Assembly: GCA_002269645.1 (NCBI GenBank)
Contig: NIVC01004009.1
Location: forward strand, 1 to 64,000
Source of the DNA: Macrostomum lignano
Lineage: Eukaryota
Direction of reading: 5' to 3'
Length of the DNA stretch: 64,000 nucleotides
In this document: positions 9,401 through 24,000 of the stretch, piece after piece
Layout of the letters: each line of letters starts with the position of its first letter
Numbering within the stretch: the first letter of the stretch is position 1
Position numbers and translations under genes: made by a program
Notes under the pieces: generated by a model
Databases searched by the model: none
The model's input: the letters and a program-made list of their open reading frames with translations, nothing else
Told to the model about the DNA's origin: nothing

Positions 9401-10894
9401 CCTGGACACATTTGGGTTGATATTTATTATCAAAACTTCAAGGAAGCTAGACCCGAAAAATTTTCGAAGAATACTATTTTGAATACGTATGACACTCTCG
9501 CTAAAAGATATAAACGTTATGGTTATCCCAGGTACGAAGCCGTTTGTCTGTACTCGAAGGGAGCCTTTATGATGACATTTTCTGAAACAGAGAGCGTTGC
9601 TGATGGTTTTGAAGAAATGGTCAAAGCGGTGCAGGTCTATCCTGAGGTTCGAGTTCATATCCATAAATCGAAAAAAGATGAGACGCTAAAAAATCTGAGC
9701 CAGAAGACTGACAGATGCGAATTCGAGGCTTGGTTTCAGCAGCATATGCTGGACCTTGACTTGCAGTCAGATGAACCACAGAGAATTGTTCAGCTCTATA
9801 CCGAAGCATTGAATAGTGAAAACTCGGATCACCAGCTGGTGTACGAGCATCTTGGTCTGTTATACTTTCGCCTTCGAGACTTTCAAGCTGCAGAAGAAAA
9901 TTTCCGAAAACTTCAGTCTGAAAATCCTCGCAGAAACTCTCTGCTGTCGTCCGCTTTGCTCAAAAGAGCCGAATCGAGAGATGAAGCTGAAAAGAGAGAC
10001 TTGATTGTCGAGGCTCTCCGACTTGGAAACCCGGAGGCGTGCCAGCCCGCTCGACTCTTGCTGGACAACCGACTGGATCATCAGCGGCGGTTCCCTCTAG
10101 AAGCCATCAAGCAGAAGTACTGTCCTGAGGACACTGACAGACCAGTGCAGATCGTGCCGTGGCTGTTCAGCAAGGACTCGTACGAGCTGCTCGCTCTGAT
10201 CAGCATCGCGTCACAGGAGGACAATGAAAACTACACAGAAACGTCGCCTCTGGTCCAGACGGATCTGCAGAAATCGAGACTGGCTCTGGAGCGAGTAGAG
10301 CAGCTCGGGAAACAGACTGAGAACGATTATTATAATGCCATCATGGAAACCCTGAAACTCGCAAAAAGTGCAATGGATGGATTAACTGCAAAACTGGATG
10401 GCAACGAAATGGAAAAGAGGCTTGATTACTTCCCATACGGTTTCAGGTATATGACTGTAAAAAAGGATGAGACAAAAAAGTTGATTTGCGGATTACAGAA
10501 ACAAAGCCACGAAAATCGAAGAACGGAGATTAACAAGAAACTTTCAAATTTGCTCAAGCTGAAGGCATCCGCAAATGATGAAGCGAATCAGAGAGTAAAT
10601 GCGCTCGTTGATTTGCTGAGCGCTCGAGAATCAAAAGCGTTTCAGTTCCAGCAGCCATTTGCTTGGCTTGTGATCTGGCAGGAGTTGAGAAATAAAGCGG
10701 AGCACTCGAGCGGACAGAAGCCCATGAAGACTTTGATTCCCGAGTTATTGGAGGCCTGGAACTGCGACCCAGATTGTGCTGGAAGCGTCGCGCACATGGC
10801 TGCGGAGTTCGTTGAGGAGACCCGGCTGATATTCGAGGCCGAGACTGAGGAGCTTCAAAAAGCAATTACTAAAGGAGGCCAAAGCACCAATTGA
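6492..10894 (+). CDS. RRM-RRM + IFIT/TTC22-like TPR + putative HEPN-like protein, paralog 1 (exons about 6492-6702, 7182-7744 with possible in-frame intron 7301-7392, 8381-10894)
   Basis: RNP2 IFIRGL; RNP1 KGTGFAEF formed across a phase-1 intron; second RRM MFVWNL/STGLVKF; phase-0 intron GTAAGT(7745)..TTTCAG(8380); long exon with TPR motifs (VYEHLGLLYFRLRDFQAAEENFRKL) and ELRNKAEH. Confidence 0.85.
6800..6987 (-). mobile_element. tRNA-derived CORE-SINE in intron 1
   Basis: Minus strand: A-box-like GCCCAGTGGTCAGCGCGTCGG, B-box GGTTCGATTC, then MIR/CORE-like GTGTCCTTGAGCAAGACACTT...CAGCTGTAAAATGGG. Confidence 0.75.
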
Positions 10895-11185
10895 AGTGTC
10901 CAACACTGCACAGACGACACCTGTGCCTCCTGCCAGGTTATTTAAAAACTTAACTAGTTTTTTAAGTTAACTAGTTGGTAATGGCGTTTCCGGACCTTCT
11001 TTTCATTTATTCGCTTTATGCTATAAAAATTTCGAATGCGTGCATGTAATTATCTTTCCGGTTCACATACTTTAATCATGGAGCTTGCATGTCAAGTGAA
11101 AACGAGAACAATCATTTTAAACATTAAAACGAAATTAGAATAGGACTGCCAATCTATACACTAAAATGAACCTTCTCAGCTAATC

Positions 11186-19795: not shown

Positions 19796-21059
19796 ACATA
19801 TAATTTGTAGTCTCCTACTGCAAGCGTATGCCAGCCTTGGGCGTAAAAGAGCCAGTGTATGAAACCTTGTAAAACGTAGCATGTTATAATAAACAATCAG
19901 TCTTTAGCGTACGCATTGAATAATAATAATAACTACTTCTTCTTCACAGTAAATCGTCCATAGCTGCTTAGCCATATACTACTGTTAGTAGCGTACTCTT
20001 AAGCCTCCTTCACTAAGTAAAAAGTAGCTACAATTGCGCCGCTCTCCACAGTTTATCGCTACAACTTTTTGTATTTTCATTACACAGCGTGCTTGCCGGC
20101 TGACAAGTGAATTATTGATAGTTTTCAGAATAAAATCTCTTGTATAAAATTTGTCATTTTGAATCAATAGAATAAATAATTTAATTGTAATTTAAAACAA
20201 TTTATATATTTAAACTGACATTGCTAATGACTCTGTTTCAAATTATCAATGATTCAGAAATTCATGGTCGCACTGCTTCTCAGACCCCATGGGGGTGGGT
20301 AGGTACGTTGGTACATTGAGGAAGAGTTTCCCCACACATTTTGCAAGAACCTCCGAGTAAGAAACATGCTGATACGTCACAGTGCAAGTTCAAAACTTTA
20401 AGCAACAACTTTACTGATTAAAAAATATATAGATCTTATGAAAAGTATACGAAAAATTGTGAGGCCTTAAAAAGTCGATAACTTATAGCTCAAAGTCAAT
20501 GTTGGTTCAGCAGCGTTTTGCGTGACTGCGTGCTTCAATTAAGAACGGCAATGGAATTTTATCACACCTTATATATATTAGGCCATATGAATGAAGCGAG
20601 AATTTGCTCGAACTGAGAAGAAACCAGGACCTGCTAAGAGTAACTTCAATGACCAAATTAATAAAAAATTGGAAAGTGATTTTAAACTTGCAAAAGACAA
20701 AATTAATAAAAGTACATGAAGGCTGCACAACAGTGCACTTCTTGGTCAAAGGGAAAATTACATAATTTGTTAGGTAAGAAAAAATAACGAAACAGGTCGA
20801 AGTTAAAAAGCAAAGCAAATAAACTGTCAACGATAAAAACCCTAAAAATCTACAGCGGGTGCCGAGACTGAGTACGGGAGTACATGTAAATAAAAAAAGC
20901 GCTCGGGCAGCAGCAACTTTATAGTCAGTAGTTAGTCATATTCCAGTCAGTATCCGATCTGAACGCGCCGTTCAAGACACTACATGCAACATTGTCGGTA
21001 CATAATTCAGAAAAGCCTCAAGCGAAAACATAGAAATGGTCAATAGATAAACAAAGCTT

Positions 21060-24000
21060 TCAGTCAGAAAGATGCAAAGCCAAAAACTTCTTAGTGGGTC
21101 TCGACTGGGCTGAATTCAAATCTCCAACTGGTACTCCGGTCCTACCAGTGGCTGCTCGAAGCGCCTCAGTCTCGGCCTCGAATATCAGCCGGGTCTCCTC
21201 AACGAACTCCGCAGCCATGTGCGCGACGCTTCCAGCACAATTTGGGTCGCAGTTCCAGGCCTCCAATAATTCGGGAATCAAAGTCTTCATGGGCTTCTGT
21301 CCGCTCGAGTGCTCCGCTTTATTTCTCAACTCCTGCCAGATCACAAGCCAAGCAAATGGCTGCTGGAACTGAAACGCTTTTGATTCTCGAGCGCTCAGCA
21401 AATCAACGAGCGCATTTACTCTCTGATTCGCTTCATCATTTGCGGATGCCTTCAGCTTGAGCAAATTTGAAAGTTTCTTGTTAATCTCCGTTCTTCGATT
21501 TTCGTGACTTTGTTTCTGTAATCCGCAAATCAACTTTTTTGTCTCATCCTTTTTTACAGTCATATACCTGAAACCGTATGGGAAGTAATCAAGCCTCTTT
21601 TCCATTTCGTAGCCATCCAGTTTTGCAGTTAATCCATCCATTGCACTTTTTGCGAGTTTCAGGGTTTCCATGATGGCATTATAATAATCGTTCTCAGTCT
21701 GTTTCCCGAGCTGCTCTACTCGCTCCAGAGCCAGTCTCGATTTCTGCAGATCCGTCTGGACCAGAGGCGACGTTTCTGTGTAGTTTTCATTGTCCTCCTG
21801 TGACGCGATGCTGATCAGAGCGAGCAGCTCGTACGAGTCCTTGCTGAACAGCCACGGCACGATCTGCACTGGTCTGTCGGGGTGCTCAGGACAGTACTTC
21901 TGCTTGATGGCTTCTAGAGGGAACCGCCGCTGATGATCCCGTCGGTTGTCCAGCAAGAGTCGAGCGGGCTGGCACGCCTCCGGGTTTCCAAGTCGGAGAG
22001 CCTCGACAATCAAGTCTCTCTTTTCAGCCCCATCTCTCGATTCGGCACGTTTGAGCAAAGCGGACGACAGCAGAGAGTTTTTACGAGGATTATCAGACTG
22101 GAGTTTTTGGAAGTTTTCATCTGCAGCTTGGAAGTCTTGAAGGCGAAGGTATAACAGACCAAGATGCTCGTACACCAACTGGTGATCCGAGTTTTCACTT
22201 TGCAGCGCCTTCTGAAAGCGTTCGAAAATAATTTGTGTAGATTGAAGATCCCAGTTCATGATGTGCAGCCTGAACCAAGCCTCCAGTTCGGGTCTTTCTG
22301 TCCGTTCGCATAGAATTTGCAATATTTTTTCTTTTTTCCAAGGAGGAAAGTAAACTCTGACATCAGGACACACTTGAACTGCTTCGACCATCGACTCAAA
22401 GCCGCTGTCAACGAGCTGCCGCCGACACATGTAGGCTCCCTTGGCATACTGAATGGCAGCTTTGTCTCTGTAATTATCCTTGTATTTGGCTATCATCGTA
22501 TCAAACTCGTCCACAATAAACTCGTGCGTGAAGTCATTCAGTCTTTCCTCTCTGTAGTCCTGCAAACACACGTCTACCCAAATGTGTCCAGGCTCAAGGG
22601 CCTCCTGCTGAGCTCGGATGAGCAGCCTCTCATACTCTTCATAGTCAGATTCGTTTTCCATCAGTTTTGCCAATGAAAAAAATAACTGAGAGTTTTTTGT
22701 TACATCTTTTAGGCTGAGTAAGATGCTTCGTGGGGTTTGAGTGTCATTCAATTGCAATTTGAGAATTCGAAACACTTTTTCACATTTAAGAGCGATTCGG
22801 TAGTGGCATTCTAAATCTTCTGCGTTCAGGTTCTTTAATGCCAGAAACGTTTCAGAAGCCAAGCTTTCGCACTTTTCTCTTAGGTCAGCGTTATTCAAAA
22901 GTGCCTCTGAATAGTTAATTAAAAACTGCTGGTAATACAGTCGAATTTCTTTGGGCGCATCGTCCAGGTTCTGCAAGTTAGCGAGCTCCTCGCTTCGCTT
23001 CCACAGGAGCAGCTCTTCTGGACCCGCAGGAGCCCTGTTGTTGCGGTATCTGCGCAAGCGCGCTAAAATGTACGCCAGCAGGTAGACGCACATGAAATTG
23101 TCGGGTCGCAAGCTCAAGCTGGTCCTAACAGCTTCCTCTGCCTGGACGTATTTCTCTATCCCTTGGTTAAACAGTGCCAGTGCCTTGACGTGAAATGCAT
23201 TGGCTCTGACTTCGATTCGCTGTGCATTATCTGGAACGTTCCAAGCCTGACCCAGAGCCTTTACGCGTTCATCGAACTCAGGAGACATTTTCTTTTGTTG
23301 TTGATCAAGATGAAGAGAGATGGCCTCCAGGACAAAGTCGCACCTAACGTGATGTTGATGGGCACTATTGCCAGCTTCTATAGCATCCTTCAGGTGCTTT
23401 CTTGCCTTGCTAAAATCAATCAGTTTGCGGCTTGGAGAAGCAGCAGAATGGTAAGCAGCAAGCAGACCTCCATACGCTGCGGATAGCATCGGCTCCAGCT
23501 TAAGTTTTTCAGACAGTTTGCGAATTACATCCTCTGGAGTTCTTAGTGAGCCTTCGTGAGCATTCCACTTGAAGGGGCTCTCAGCGTCCTTTAGCTGGTG
23601 TGGCTCCGCAGAGATTTCCTGATGTAAAATGGAATTAAATTTGGACAATCGGTAAAATAAAGTTGAATAAAGTACATATAGGTGAATTGATAAATAAAAA
23701 CACGATGCATTTTATACATCGAGTCTCCATGTAATGCATCGAATCGATGCATTTGAGTCTCCTAGTGACAAACCAATGTTACTTGGTACGACGGATAAGG
23801 GAACACAGCATCTGTTTTCTAACTTCCTGTCTGCGCTTAAAAGCGATTGTTTCTGTGTTTCACATAGTGCAATGATGTACGCACTTTGCTGCTTTTGAAT
23901 CATTCTGCAAACCTTTCCCCTGTCAGACAATAGGATTAAATCGATTCGTTCTATAGTTGTAGTTAAAATTCAGCAGATCGAGTTGACTCACAGAGAGAAC

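What the first reader, a model, noticed from the sequence alone, without database searches (positions are those of the whole stretch)
10140..21880. Convergent paralogs with divergent sensor halves and near-identical effector halves
Seen: paralogs point toward each other about 10 kb apart. The last 237 shared aa (10140-10850 vs 21166-21880) differ at only two residues (N/Y, D/N), whereas the RRM and N-terminal TPR regions are extensively diverged; identity rises sharply near SENSDHQ. Inference: recent gene conversion across the inverted repeat homogenised the putative HEPN domain (HEPN RNases act as dimers) while the recognition surfaces diversified, as in immune receptors.
Basis: partly seen in the sequence, partly recalled or inferred. 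Interest (0 to 1): 0.72.

Follow-up and report, generated by a model that had tools for sequence, protein, structure and literature searches.

The report
Gene conversion between inverted flatworm paralogs
Two old, tail-to-tail duplicate genes in the flatworm Macrostomum lignano have had the last ~1 kb of their coding sequence repeatedly copied from one onto the other, a clean but ordinary case of gene conversion; the idea that the shared part is a HEPN RNase "effector" is not supported by any test I could run.

Summary
Two convergent paralogs (A: big exon 8381-10894, +; B: 23666-21060, -) share a 1087-nt inverted repeat (9777-10863 / 21151-22237, 96%). The 690-nt core (10140-10829) has 4 nt differences and exactly the two residue changes reported (N/Y, D/N). 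Synonymous divergence is saturated in the N-half (pS 0.77), 0.30 at 9785-10009 and 0.014 in the core. The longest perfect run is 267 nt against a permutation maximum of 57 (0/10,000).

The window is animal DNA: Macrostomum lignano or a very close relative. A second copy of the same locus (Mlig_3_7 contig, L001) allows a four-taxon test. The N-half has 483 orthology sites and 0 concerted sites. Positions 10088-10845 have 1 orthology site, 13 concerted sites and 55 sites where only A(L001) differs. So recent, most parsimoniously B-to-A, gene conversion is well supported, layered on older tracts. Protein mosaics suggest exchange in both directions.

The functional story is not supported. The C-terminal domain has an RNKAEH motif (2.4% chance expectation) but no Pfam, PADLOC, PDB, exhaustive HMMER or fold-search support for HEPN. 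Window B has lost exon 1 (RRM1), and there is no evidence of diversifying selection. This is an ordinary mechanism, nicely documented, in a lineage-restricted gene family.

The parts
6492..10894 (+). Gene A (A-type RRM-RRM / helical TPR-like / C-terminal helical domain protein). The best splice model has exons 6492-6702, 7182-7795 and 8381-10894, giving an intact 1112-aa ORF.
   Evidence: tblastn of M. lignano proteins P0001 and P0005; enumeration of GT-AG splice sites that keep the frame open; RRM_1 and TPR hits.
21060..24372 (-). Gene B (B-type paralog). It has a partial exon 2 at 24372-23992 and the big exon at about 23666-21060, whose ORF is intact. Exon 1 and the 5' part of exon 2 (RRM1 and the start codon) are missing in this haplotype.
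   Evidence: tblastn of P0002-P0004. Exon 1 is found in L001 at 10001-10198 but not in the window. The deletion of L001 9315-10531 was mapped.
9777..10863 (+). Left arm of the inverted repeat: the homogenised 3' coding part of gene A.
   Evidence: 1087 nt, 96%; sliding identity.
21151..22237 (-). Right arm of the inverted repeat: the homogenised 3' coding part of gene B.
10131..10849 (+). Most recent conversion tract in copy A, specific to the window lineage and most parsimoniously B to A. The 5' breakpoint lies between 10131 and 10223. The 3' breakpoint lies between 10825 and 10850.
   Evidence: Here Aw is 99-100% identical to Bw and 92-100% to Bl, but only 67-93% to Al. Site patterns are 1 orthology site (10130), 13 concerted and 55 Al-only. 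dS is 0.014.
9785..10130 (+). Zone of older conversion that predates the split of the two locus copies. dS is 0.30 falling to 0.03. It contains the single above-threshold TPR unit.
   Evidence: 22 orthology sites and 0 concerted sites; all four sequences are 0.8-1.0 identical; TPR_8 at A residues 458-486.
10688..10705 (+). Codons for RNKAEH (A residues 740-745), the Rx4H motif on which the HEPN idea rests. The same motif is at B residues 775-780.
   Evidence: Regex on the translations plus a shuffle control.
11183..14087 (.). Spacer satellites: 40-nt x 12.4 copies (11183-11677) and 23-nt x 88.8 copies (12046-14087). Both are present in L001 with different copy numbers.
14115..19793 (-). BEL/Pao-type retrotransposon inserted in the spacer. 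The pol ORF is 14831-18028 and a gag/protease-like ORF is 18421-19146. It is absent from L001, and no LTR pair was detected.
   Evidence: Pfam hits to Peptidase_A17, RVT_1, Integrase_H2C2, rve and DUF5641; absent in L001; no LTRs.
24420..25081 (+). PIF/Harbinger transposase fragment (ORF 24510-24944) inserted next to the deletion that removed the 5' end of gene B.
   Evidence: DDE_Tnp_4 E=3.8e-28; junction mapping against L001.

Best explanation
The window is nuclear DNA of the flatworm Macrostomum lignano or a very close relative. It holds two anciently duplicated, convergently oriented genes of a lineage-restricted family with the architecture 2 x RRM, helical TPR-like region, all-helical C-terminal domain.

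The last ~1.05 kb of their coding sequences forms an inverted repeat that undergoes recurrent non-reciprocal homologous recombination (interlocus gene conversion). An older round, before the two sampled copies of the locus separated, homogenised about 9785-10845. A recent round in the window's lineage copied about 0.6-0.7 kb (10131/10223 to 10825/10850), most parsimoniously from B onto A, and erased the older A-type sequence that the other locus copy still carries.

Conversion stays confined to the 3' part because only there is nucleotide identity still high enough to support homologous pairing. The N-half is about 60% identical and the 3' flanks are unrelated, so the process reinforces itself. 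In the inverted orientation, crossover-free exchange homogenises the arms without deleting the spacer.

Shown: the non-uniform dS, the runs test, the four-taxon incongruence and the sharp boundaries. Inferred: the direction, the number of events and the reason for the confinement. The biochemical role of the shared domain is unknown. An RNA-related role is plausible from the RRMs, and HEPN RNase activity is only a motif-level guess, which I put at about 0.25.
For: Inverted repeat of 1087 nt at 96%.

NG86 divergence: N-half pS 0.77 (saturated) and dN 0.376; 9785-10009 dS 0.30; 10010-10139 dS 0.03; core dS 0.014 from 4 differences in 690 nt.

Runs test: 267-nt perfect run against a permutation maximum of 57, 0/10,000.

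Same locus in an independent assembly: L001 = NIVC01004067.1, collinear, 95-97% identical.

Sliding identities: in 10088-10535, Aw-Bw is 0.99-1.00 and Aw-Bl 0.92-1.00, but Aw-Al only 0.67-0.93.

Site patterns: 483 orthology / 0 concerted in the N-half; 1 / 13 plus 55 Al-only in 10088-10845; 114 / 0 in the 3' flank.

Timing: core dS of 0.014 is below the between-copy dS of 0.04-0.075, so the last event postdates the split.

Protein mosaics: Bw carries A-type CQPARLL, and P0003 (B-type) carries A-type EKNY..SK.

Organism: all homologs are M. lignano, and the spacer holds a BEL/Pao element.
Against: No read-level data are available, so homogenisation by assembly or polishing cannot be formally excluded. 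The Mlig_3_7 assembly is reported to have many subgenome-chimeric scaffolds (PMC10733133), which could blur which copy L001 represents.

The B-to-A direction assumes that the A(L001)-specific states are ancestral A sequence. They could instead have come into A(L001) from a third, unsampled paralog. A post-split A/B exchange is still required by the 13 concerted sites.

Only two locus copies were available at DNA level.
Confidence: 0.85

Rival explanations
1. Assembly or polishing artefact. The two arms are really as divergent as in L001, but consensus polishing with mis-mapped reads, or a chimeric join, made them nearly identical in this assembly.
For: M. lignano is a neopolyploid with three subgenomes. 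Its assemblies are known to be hard, and 36% of Mlig_3_7 by length is chimeric (PMC10733133). No reads are available here.
Against: The arms are not identical: 4 differences in the core and 12 codon differences across 9965-10860.

The near-identity stops at defined points inside unique flanking sequence.

The independent assembly L001 also shows A/B homogenisation, but with its own shared variants (13 concerted sites).

Protein models from a third source (P0002, P0003) show the same kind of mosaic.

Cross-polishing would not produce a graded dS series of 0.30, 0.03 and 0.014.
Confidence: 0.07
2. There has been no exchange. The C-terminal domain is simply under extreme purifying selection, while the N-half is free to diverge.
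For: The C-terminal half has lower dN than the N-half.
Against: Selection on protein sequence does not erase synonymous differences, yet third-position identity is about 1.0 and dS is 0.014 against saturation upstream. Copy A of the other locus differs from window A by up to 33% in the same region while window A equals B. Concerted site patterns are present.
Confidence: 0.01
3. A one-off structural event and not recurrent conversion: a recent partial re-duplication or template-switch repair, possibly linked to the nearby transposon activity, replaced the 3' end of one gene with that of the other.
For: The spacer and the 5' end of B have been remodelled in this haplotype by a Pao insertion, a Harbinger fragment and a 1.2-kb deletion, so breaks and repair have occurred here.
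Against: There are three tiers of divergence. Homogenisation is also present, with different variants, in L001, which lacks the Pao insertion. Mosaics run in both directions. Together these indicate several events over time. No junction scar or extra sequence sits at the tract ends, and the alignment is gap-free in the core.
Confidence: 0.05
4. Adaptive reading. The shared domain is a HEPN RNase that must stay identical because the two proteins dimerise, while the RRM/TPR halves diversify as recognition modules, as in immune receptors. On this view conversion is maintained by selection.
For: RNKAEH fits the HEPN Rx4-6H rule with a polar residue after R (PMC3710099), and a strict motif is expected in only 2.4% of shuffles. 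The domain is predicted to be all-helical. RRMs imply RNA binding. Animal DZIP3-type HEPN domains are known to fuse to TPRs and to expand in particular lineages.
Against: There is no profile, sequence or structural match to any HEPN family. The one non-family phmmer hit is a low-complexity nestin-like protein.

There is no demonstrable positive selection.

Window B lacks RRM1 and its start codon, and both L001 copies have in-frame stops.

Homology-dependent conversion explains the pattern without invoking selection.
Confidence: 0.1

Closest known systems
Interlocus (ectopic) gene conversion and concerted evolution of inverted duplicates, for example the arm-to-arm conversion of primate Y-chromosome palindromes and partial conversion between tandem or inverted paralogs such as the globin or CYP21A2/CYP21A1P pairs (established knowledge)
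   Same: Non-reciprocal sequence transfer between paralogs in cis. Tracts of hundreds of bp with sharp ends. Synonymous sites are homogenised. Paralogs within one haplotype are closer than orthologs between haplotypes. The inverted orientation lets exchange occur without deleting the spacer. One partner (window B) may be a damaged copy acting as donor.
   Different: Only the 3' third of the genes takes part. The arms are short (~1.1 kb) compared with Y palindromes. The spacer is large and polymorphic: 10.3 kb here against about 4.8 kb in L001. The setting is a neopolyploid flatworm genome with up to three homeologous copies of the locus.
DZIP3/hRUL138-type and other eukaryotic HEPN domains (Anantharaman et al. 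2013, PMC3710099)
   Same: An all-helical C-terminal module with an R-N-x3-H motif, fused to TPR-like repeats, in a lineage-specific animal family.
   Different: There is no detectable profile or structural similarity to any HEPN family. An RRM fusion is not listed among the DZIP3 architectures quoted in that survey (0 occurrences of 'RRM' in its text). The fold is not established.
BEL/Pao LTR retrotransposons of metazoans
   Same: The spacer element has the Pao peptidase A17, RT, integrase H2C2 and core, and DUF5641 domains, as hit in the pol ORF.
   Different: No LTR pair was detectable, so the copy may be truncated. It is a passenger in the spacer and not part of the conversion mechanism.

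Membership tests
Interlocus gene conversion (concerted evolution) | Abrupt, large change in synonymous divergence along the paralog alignment | tested here: met
   pS is 0.77 (saturated) upstream of 9785; dS is 0.30, 0.03 and 0.014 in successive blocks.
Interlocus gene conversion (concerted evolution) | Identical run significantly longer than expected from the overall density of differences (Sawyer/GENECONV logic) | tested here: met
   267-nt run against a permutation maximum of 57. The run of identical third positions is 123 against a maximum of 36. In both cases 0 of 10,000 permutations reach the observed value.
Interlocus gene conversion (concerted evolution) | Phylogenetic incongruence: paralogs within one haplotype are closer than the same gene between haplotypes, only inside the tract | tested here: met
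   Identity profiles. Site patterns are 483:0 in the N-half, 1:13 (plus 55 Al-only) in 10088-10845 and 114:0 in the 3' flank.
Interlocus gene conversion (concerted evolution) | Both copies physically present with their own flanks (not an assembly collapse) | not testable with these tools
   No reads are available. Indirect support: unique flanks, residual differences, and the same arrangement in an independent assembly.
HEPN superfamily | Rx4-6H motif with a polar residue (N/D/H) after the R | tested here: met
   RNKAEH at A residue 740 and B residue 775. Chance expectation is 2.4% for the strict form and 31% for the generic form. Definition from PMC3710099.
HEPN superfamily | Profile-level sequence similarity to a described HEPN family | tested here: not met
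   No HEPN hit in Pfam at E<=10 or in PADLOC at E<=1. PDB phmmer gave only unrelated hits with E>0.8. Exhaustive phmmer gave only the family itself plus a low-complexity hit.
HEPN superfamily | Four-helix up-and-down bundle fold with the motif at the active-site helix | tested here: inconclusive
   The AF2 models are all-helical but low-confidence (pLDDT 42 and 50). Foldseek against the PDB gave a best E of 2.3 and 0.75, with no HEPN structures.
HEPN superfamily | Upstream conserved acidic residue (Ex3[KR]), metal-independent RNase activity, dimeric active site | not testable with these tools
   The domain is rich in E/K/R, so Ex3[KR] strings such as EANQR occur but do not discriminate (read directly from the sequence). 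Activity and dimerisation need experiments.
RRM proteins | RRM_1 profile match above the Pfam threshold | tested here: met
   P0001 scores 29.8 bits and P0002 36.1 bits against a cutoff of 20.7. This region corresponds to exons 1-2 of gene A. The RRM1 exon is absent from window B.
TPR proteins | TPR profile matches above threshold, in several repeats | tested here: inconclusive
   Only one unit is above threshold: A 458-486, TPR_8 34.5 bits against 25.7. All N-half matches are sub-threshold, and in B no TPR match reaches its cutoff.
BEL/Pao LTR retrotransposon | Pao peptidase A17 + RT + integrase polyprotein, flanked by LTRs | tested here: inconclusive
   The domains are met (Peptidase_A17 E=8e-51, RVT_1, Integrase_H2C2, rve, DUF5641). 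No LTR pair was found.

The most novel reading that the evidence does not exclude
The homogenised C-terminal module is a previously unrecognised, highly divergent HEPN-like RNase domain. The locus would then be a flatworm-specific RNA-sensing pair in which conversion keeps a shared dimerising nuclease identical while the RRM/TPR halves evolve separate specificities, and in which damaged copies such as window B act as sequence donors.
Probability: 0.08. Interest if true: 0.7.

Novelty: new member of a known kind. Interest (0 to 1): 0.3.

Why it matters
It is a clean, well-bounded natural example of partial gene conversion between inverted paralogs in a neopolyploid animal. An internal control (the same locus without the latest tract) dates and orients the event.

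In practice it warns that gene trees, orthology calls and read mapping for this M. lignano family, and probably others in this repeat-rich three-subgenome genome, will be misleading in the 3' kilobase.

It also flags a lineage-restricted RRM-containing family whose C-terminal domain has no detectable relatives. If that domain proved to be a nuclease, the locus would become more interesting. As it stands, the mechanism is textbook.

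Tried and rejected
- **Prokaryotic reading of the window.** Rejected after Pfam showed a BEL/Pao polyprotein in the spacer, all homologs proved to be M. lignano and the genes proved to be spliced.
- **HEPN assignment.** Pfam at E<=10, PADLOC, PDB sequence search, exhaustive phmmer on 1.84 billion proteins, AF2 on the 263-aa and 168-aa constructs and Foldseek against the PDB on both all gave nothing usable. The single outside hit, P0006, is a nestin-like protein with acidic low-complexity repeats.
- **Extending the family.** A profile of the N-half found only M. 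lignano proteins.
- **Fetching DNA for the mosaic proteins P0001-P0003.** They are not on record, so only protein-level mosaics could be used.
- **Purifying selection as the sole cause.** Rejected on synonymous sites.
- **Spacer inversion between locus copies.** The unique spacer segment and both satellites have the same orientation relative to the genes in the window and in L001, so there is no evidence of inversion.
- **Positive selection in the N-half.** dS is saturated between the paralogs. The hypervariable patch at 9371-9554 has pS and pN both raised, which points to exchanged older sequence and not to selection.
- **LTRs for the Pao element.** None were found.

Full report
**1. What is at the coordinates**

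ORF listing and repeat finding show two long convergent ORFs, A at 8471-10894 (+) and B at 21060-23648 (-). They share an inverted repeat with arms at 9777-10863 and 21151-22237: 1087 nt, 96% complementary, 10,287 nt apart. A global protein alignment shows that they are paralogs over their whole length.

At nucleotide level the 690-nt core 10140-10829 has four differences, two of them synonymous.

**2. The signal is not chance and not protein-level constraint**

| Region (window) | Synonymous divergence | Other |
|---|---|---|
| N-half, 8471-9784 | pS 0.77 (saturated) | dN 0.376 |
| 9785-10009 | dS 0.30 | |
| 10010-10139 | dS 0.03 | |
| Core, 10140-10829 | dS 0.014 | 4 nt differences in 690 nt |
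| Last ~20 codons and 3' flanks | essentially unrelated | |

These values come from Nei-Gojobori estimates. A permutation version of Sawyer's runs test gives a longest perfect run of 267 nt, against a permutation mean of 25 and maximum of 57 (0/10,000). For third positions alone the run is 123 against a maximum of 36. Purifying selection cannot erase synonymous differences, so sequence has been exchanged.

**3. What genome this is**

The largest ORF in the spacer (14831-18028, -) is a BEL/Pao retrotransposon polyprotein with Peptidase_A17 (E=8e-51), RVT_1, Integrase_H2C2, rve and DUF5641. The only homologs of A and B among 5.8 billion proteins are five 'RRM domain-containing proteins' of the flatworm Macrostomum lignano. 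A profile of the N-half again finds only M. lignano. The window is therefore metazoan nuclear DNA from M. lignano or a very close relative.

The 'ORFs' are the large last exons of spliced genes. Gene A can be assembled as 6492-6702 / 7182-7795 / 8381-10894, an intact 1112-aa ORF. The family architecture is two N-terminal RRMs (RRM_1 above threshold in P0001 and P0002), a long helical region with sub-threshold TPR matches, one bona fide TPR unit (A 458-486, inside the repeat), and an all-helical C-terminal domain of about 260 aa.

The rest of the window is rich in transposons and satellites.

**4. The decisive test: a second copy of the locus**

The contig that encodes P0004 (NIVC01004067.1, assembly Mlig_3_7; locus L001) is collinear with the window at 95-97% identity. 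It carries the same convergent A/B pair, but it lacks the Pao insertion and has different satellite copy numbers. It is either an allele or a homeolog. M. lignano has three subgenomes that differ by 1.4-2.4% SNPs plus many indels (PMC10733133).

I aligned the four sequences Aw and Bw (window) with Al and Bl (L001).

- **N-half.** It behaves orthologously. Aw-Al is 0.92-1.00 and Bw-Bl 0.89-1.00, against A-B values of 0.5-0.77.
- **Window 10088-10535.** Aw-Bw is 0.99-1.00 and Aw-Bl 0.92-1.00, but Aw-Al is only 0.67-0.93.

| Region (window) | Orthology sites | Concerted sites | Other |
|---|---|---|---|
| 8381-9784 | 483 | 0 | |
| 9785-10087 | 22 | 0 | |
| 10088-10845 | 1 | 13 | 55 sites where only Al differs |
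| 3' flank | 114 | 0 | |

The core dS of 0.014 is lower than the between-copy dS of 0.04-0.075.

It follows that after the two locus copies separated, about 0.6-0.7 kb of copy A in the window lineage was overwritten with B-type sequence. The 5' breakpoint lies at 10131-10223 and the 3' breakpoint at 10825-10850. The zone 9785-10130, and parts of 10536-10845 in L001, were already homogenised earlier.

The B-to-A direction is the parsimonious reading. The alternative is that Al received its divergent patch from a third paralog, and that reading still needs a post-split A/B exchange to explain the 13 concerted sites.

**5. The exchange is recurrent and bidirectional**

Residue tables were built for eight sequences that represent seven copies: Aw, Al, Bw, Bl, P0001, P0002 and P0003, plus P0004, which is the gene model of Bl.

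- Window B carries the A-type patch CQPARLL where Bl, P0002 and P0004 have CKPAQHL.
- P0003, which has a B-type N-half, carries A-type patches (L, EKNY..SK) before it returns to B-type.

This is what repeated short conversion tracts in both directions would produce. The caveat is that these are gene models from draft assemblies.

**6. State of the genes**

Window B has lost L001 positions 9315-10531, which hold exon 1 (start codon and RRM1), intron 1 and the 5' part of exon 2. Beside the deletion it has a 660-bp PIF/Harbinger transposase fragment (DDE_Tnp_4, E=4e-28). Its large exon is still open, and Bw-Bl dN/dS is 0.27-0.32, so the truncation is probably recent.

In L001 both copies have an in-frame stop in the large exon. 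P0001 and P0002 read through those positions, so the stops are either copy-specific or assembly errors.

Aw-Al dN/dS in the N-half is about 1.0, from 40 nonsynonymous and 10 synonymous differences. Much of that lies in a patch at 9371-9554 where pS and pN are both about 0.2. That looks like another exchanged tract and not like positive selection.

None of this resembles a finely maintained receptor pair. It fits redundant copies in a neopolyploid that are drifting and exchanging sequence.

**7. The HEPN claim**

The C-terminal domain contains RNKAEH (A 740-745). This fits the HEPN Rx4-6H rule with a polar residue after R (PMC3710099). A strict motif arises in 2.4% of shuffles of the 263-aa C-terminal region, and the generic motif in 31%. 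Every other test was negative or uninformative:

- Pfam at E<=10 shows no HEPN family.
- PADLOC shows nothing.
- PDB sequence search gives only unrelated hits with E>0.8.
- An exhaustive phmmer over 1.84 billion representatives finds only the family itself and a nestin-like low-complexity protein.
- The AlphaFold2 models are all-helical but unreliable, with pLDDT 42 and 50.
- Foldseek finds nothing with E<0.7.

HEPN domains are notoriously divergent, so this does not exclude one, but membership is not established. Animal DZIP3-type HEPN domains do fuse to TPRs and do expand in particular lineages, which makes the idea reasonable as a lead only. I put it at about 0.25.

**8. Mechanism**

The best-supported mechanism is homology-dependent, non-crossover repair between the inverted arms in cis or between sister chromatids. 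This is ordinary interlocus gene conversion.

It is confined to the last ~1.05 kb because only there does identity remain high enough for heteroduplex formation, and each event restores that identity. Upstream identity is about 60%, and the downstream flanks are unrelated, so they act as barriers.

The inverted orientation means that a crossover would invert the spacer instead of deleting it. The spacer has the same orientation in the window and in L001, so no inversion is seen in this sample of two.

Selection for an identical shared domain is not needed to explain the data, and it has not been tested.

**9. Rivals**

- **Assembly or polishing artefact (about 0.07).** It cannot be excluded without reads. 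Against it are the residual differences, the graded tiers, the unique flanks and the independent concerted pattern in L001.
- **Pure purifying selection (about 0.01).** Refuted.
- **A single structural replacement event (about 0.05).** Less likely, given the several tiers and the mosaics in both directions.
- **The adaptive HEPN-dimer or receptor reading (about 0.1).** It stays open but unsupported.

**10. Verdict**

The HEPN, effector-versus-sensor and immune-receptor framing is not supported. This is a new, well-documented instance of a known process in a lineage-restricted gene family, of modest interest.

Noticed in passing
window 24373-25081 (compare L001 9259-10532): Gene B in this haplotype has lost 1217 bp (exon 1, intron 1 and the start of exon 2, which means the start codon and RRM1). 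The deletion junction shows about 4 bp of microhomology. A 660-bp PIF/Harbinger DDE_Tnp_4 transposase fragment is inserted 9 bp upstream. The probable conversion donor is therefore a 5'-truncated gene.
   Followed up: yes
L001 (A copy: '...VDIYY*NFKQ', equivalent to about window 9420; B copy: 'TDLQK*RLALE', equivalent to about window 10275): Both paralogs in the Mlig_3_7 contig carry an in-frame stop in the large exon. The B stop explains why gene model P0004 ends there. P0001 and P0002 read through these positions, so the stops are either copy-specific nonsense mutations or assembly errors.
   Followed up: partly
window 9371-9554 (A) and 22451-22688 (B): The same part of the N-half is unusually divergent between the two locus copies in both genes. 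For A, pS is about 0.2 and pN about 0.2. For B, pS is 0.16-0.29 and pN 0.04-0.08. It does not resemble the other paralog, so it may be a tract imported from a third, unsampled copy.
   Followed up: partly
window 11183-11677 and 12046-14087: Two satellites lie in the spacer: 40 nt x 12.4 copies and 23 nt x 88.8 copies (AT-skewed, GC 33%). Both are present in L001 with different lengths (the 40-nt array is about 1.2 kb there and the 23-nt array about 0.76 kb), so they are fast-evolving arrays.
   Followed up: partly
window 14115-20442; also 3265-3769: A BEL/Pao element with an intact 1065-aa pol ORF but no detectable LTRs is inserted in the spacer and is absent from L001. A related gag-region fragment (84% identical) lies at 3265-3769. 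The adjoining 650-bp segment 19793-20442 is 81% identical to a segment that sits at a different place in the L001 spacer.
   Followed up: partly
window 28890-29385, 31383-32646, 52066-53309: Further long tandem arrays: 15 nt x 33, 23/46 nt x 15 followed by (CAGA) x 231, and (TC) x 65 followed by 30 nt x 30.6. The 15-nt and 46-nt arrays are shared with L001.
   Followed up: no
window 33204-39802, 40461-41249, 61663-63996: Other mobile elements: ORFs of a Gypsy-type LTR retroelement (zf-CCHC gag, RT, RNase H, integrase), a mariner/Tc1-type transposase ORF, and an ORF with protein-primed type-B DNA polymerase plus an endonuclease VII domain (Polinton/Maverick-like) that runs to the window edge.
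   Followed up: no
window 42736-43419 and 47701-48324: Two ORFs with weak Sina-type RING finger matches lie about 5 kb apart. They may be another local paralog pair.
   Followed up: no
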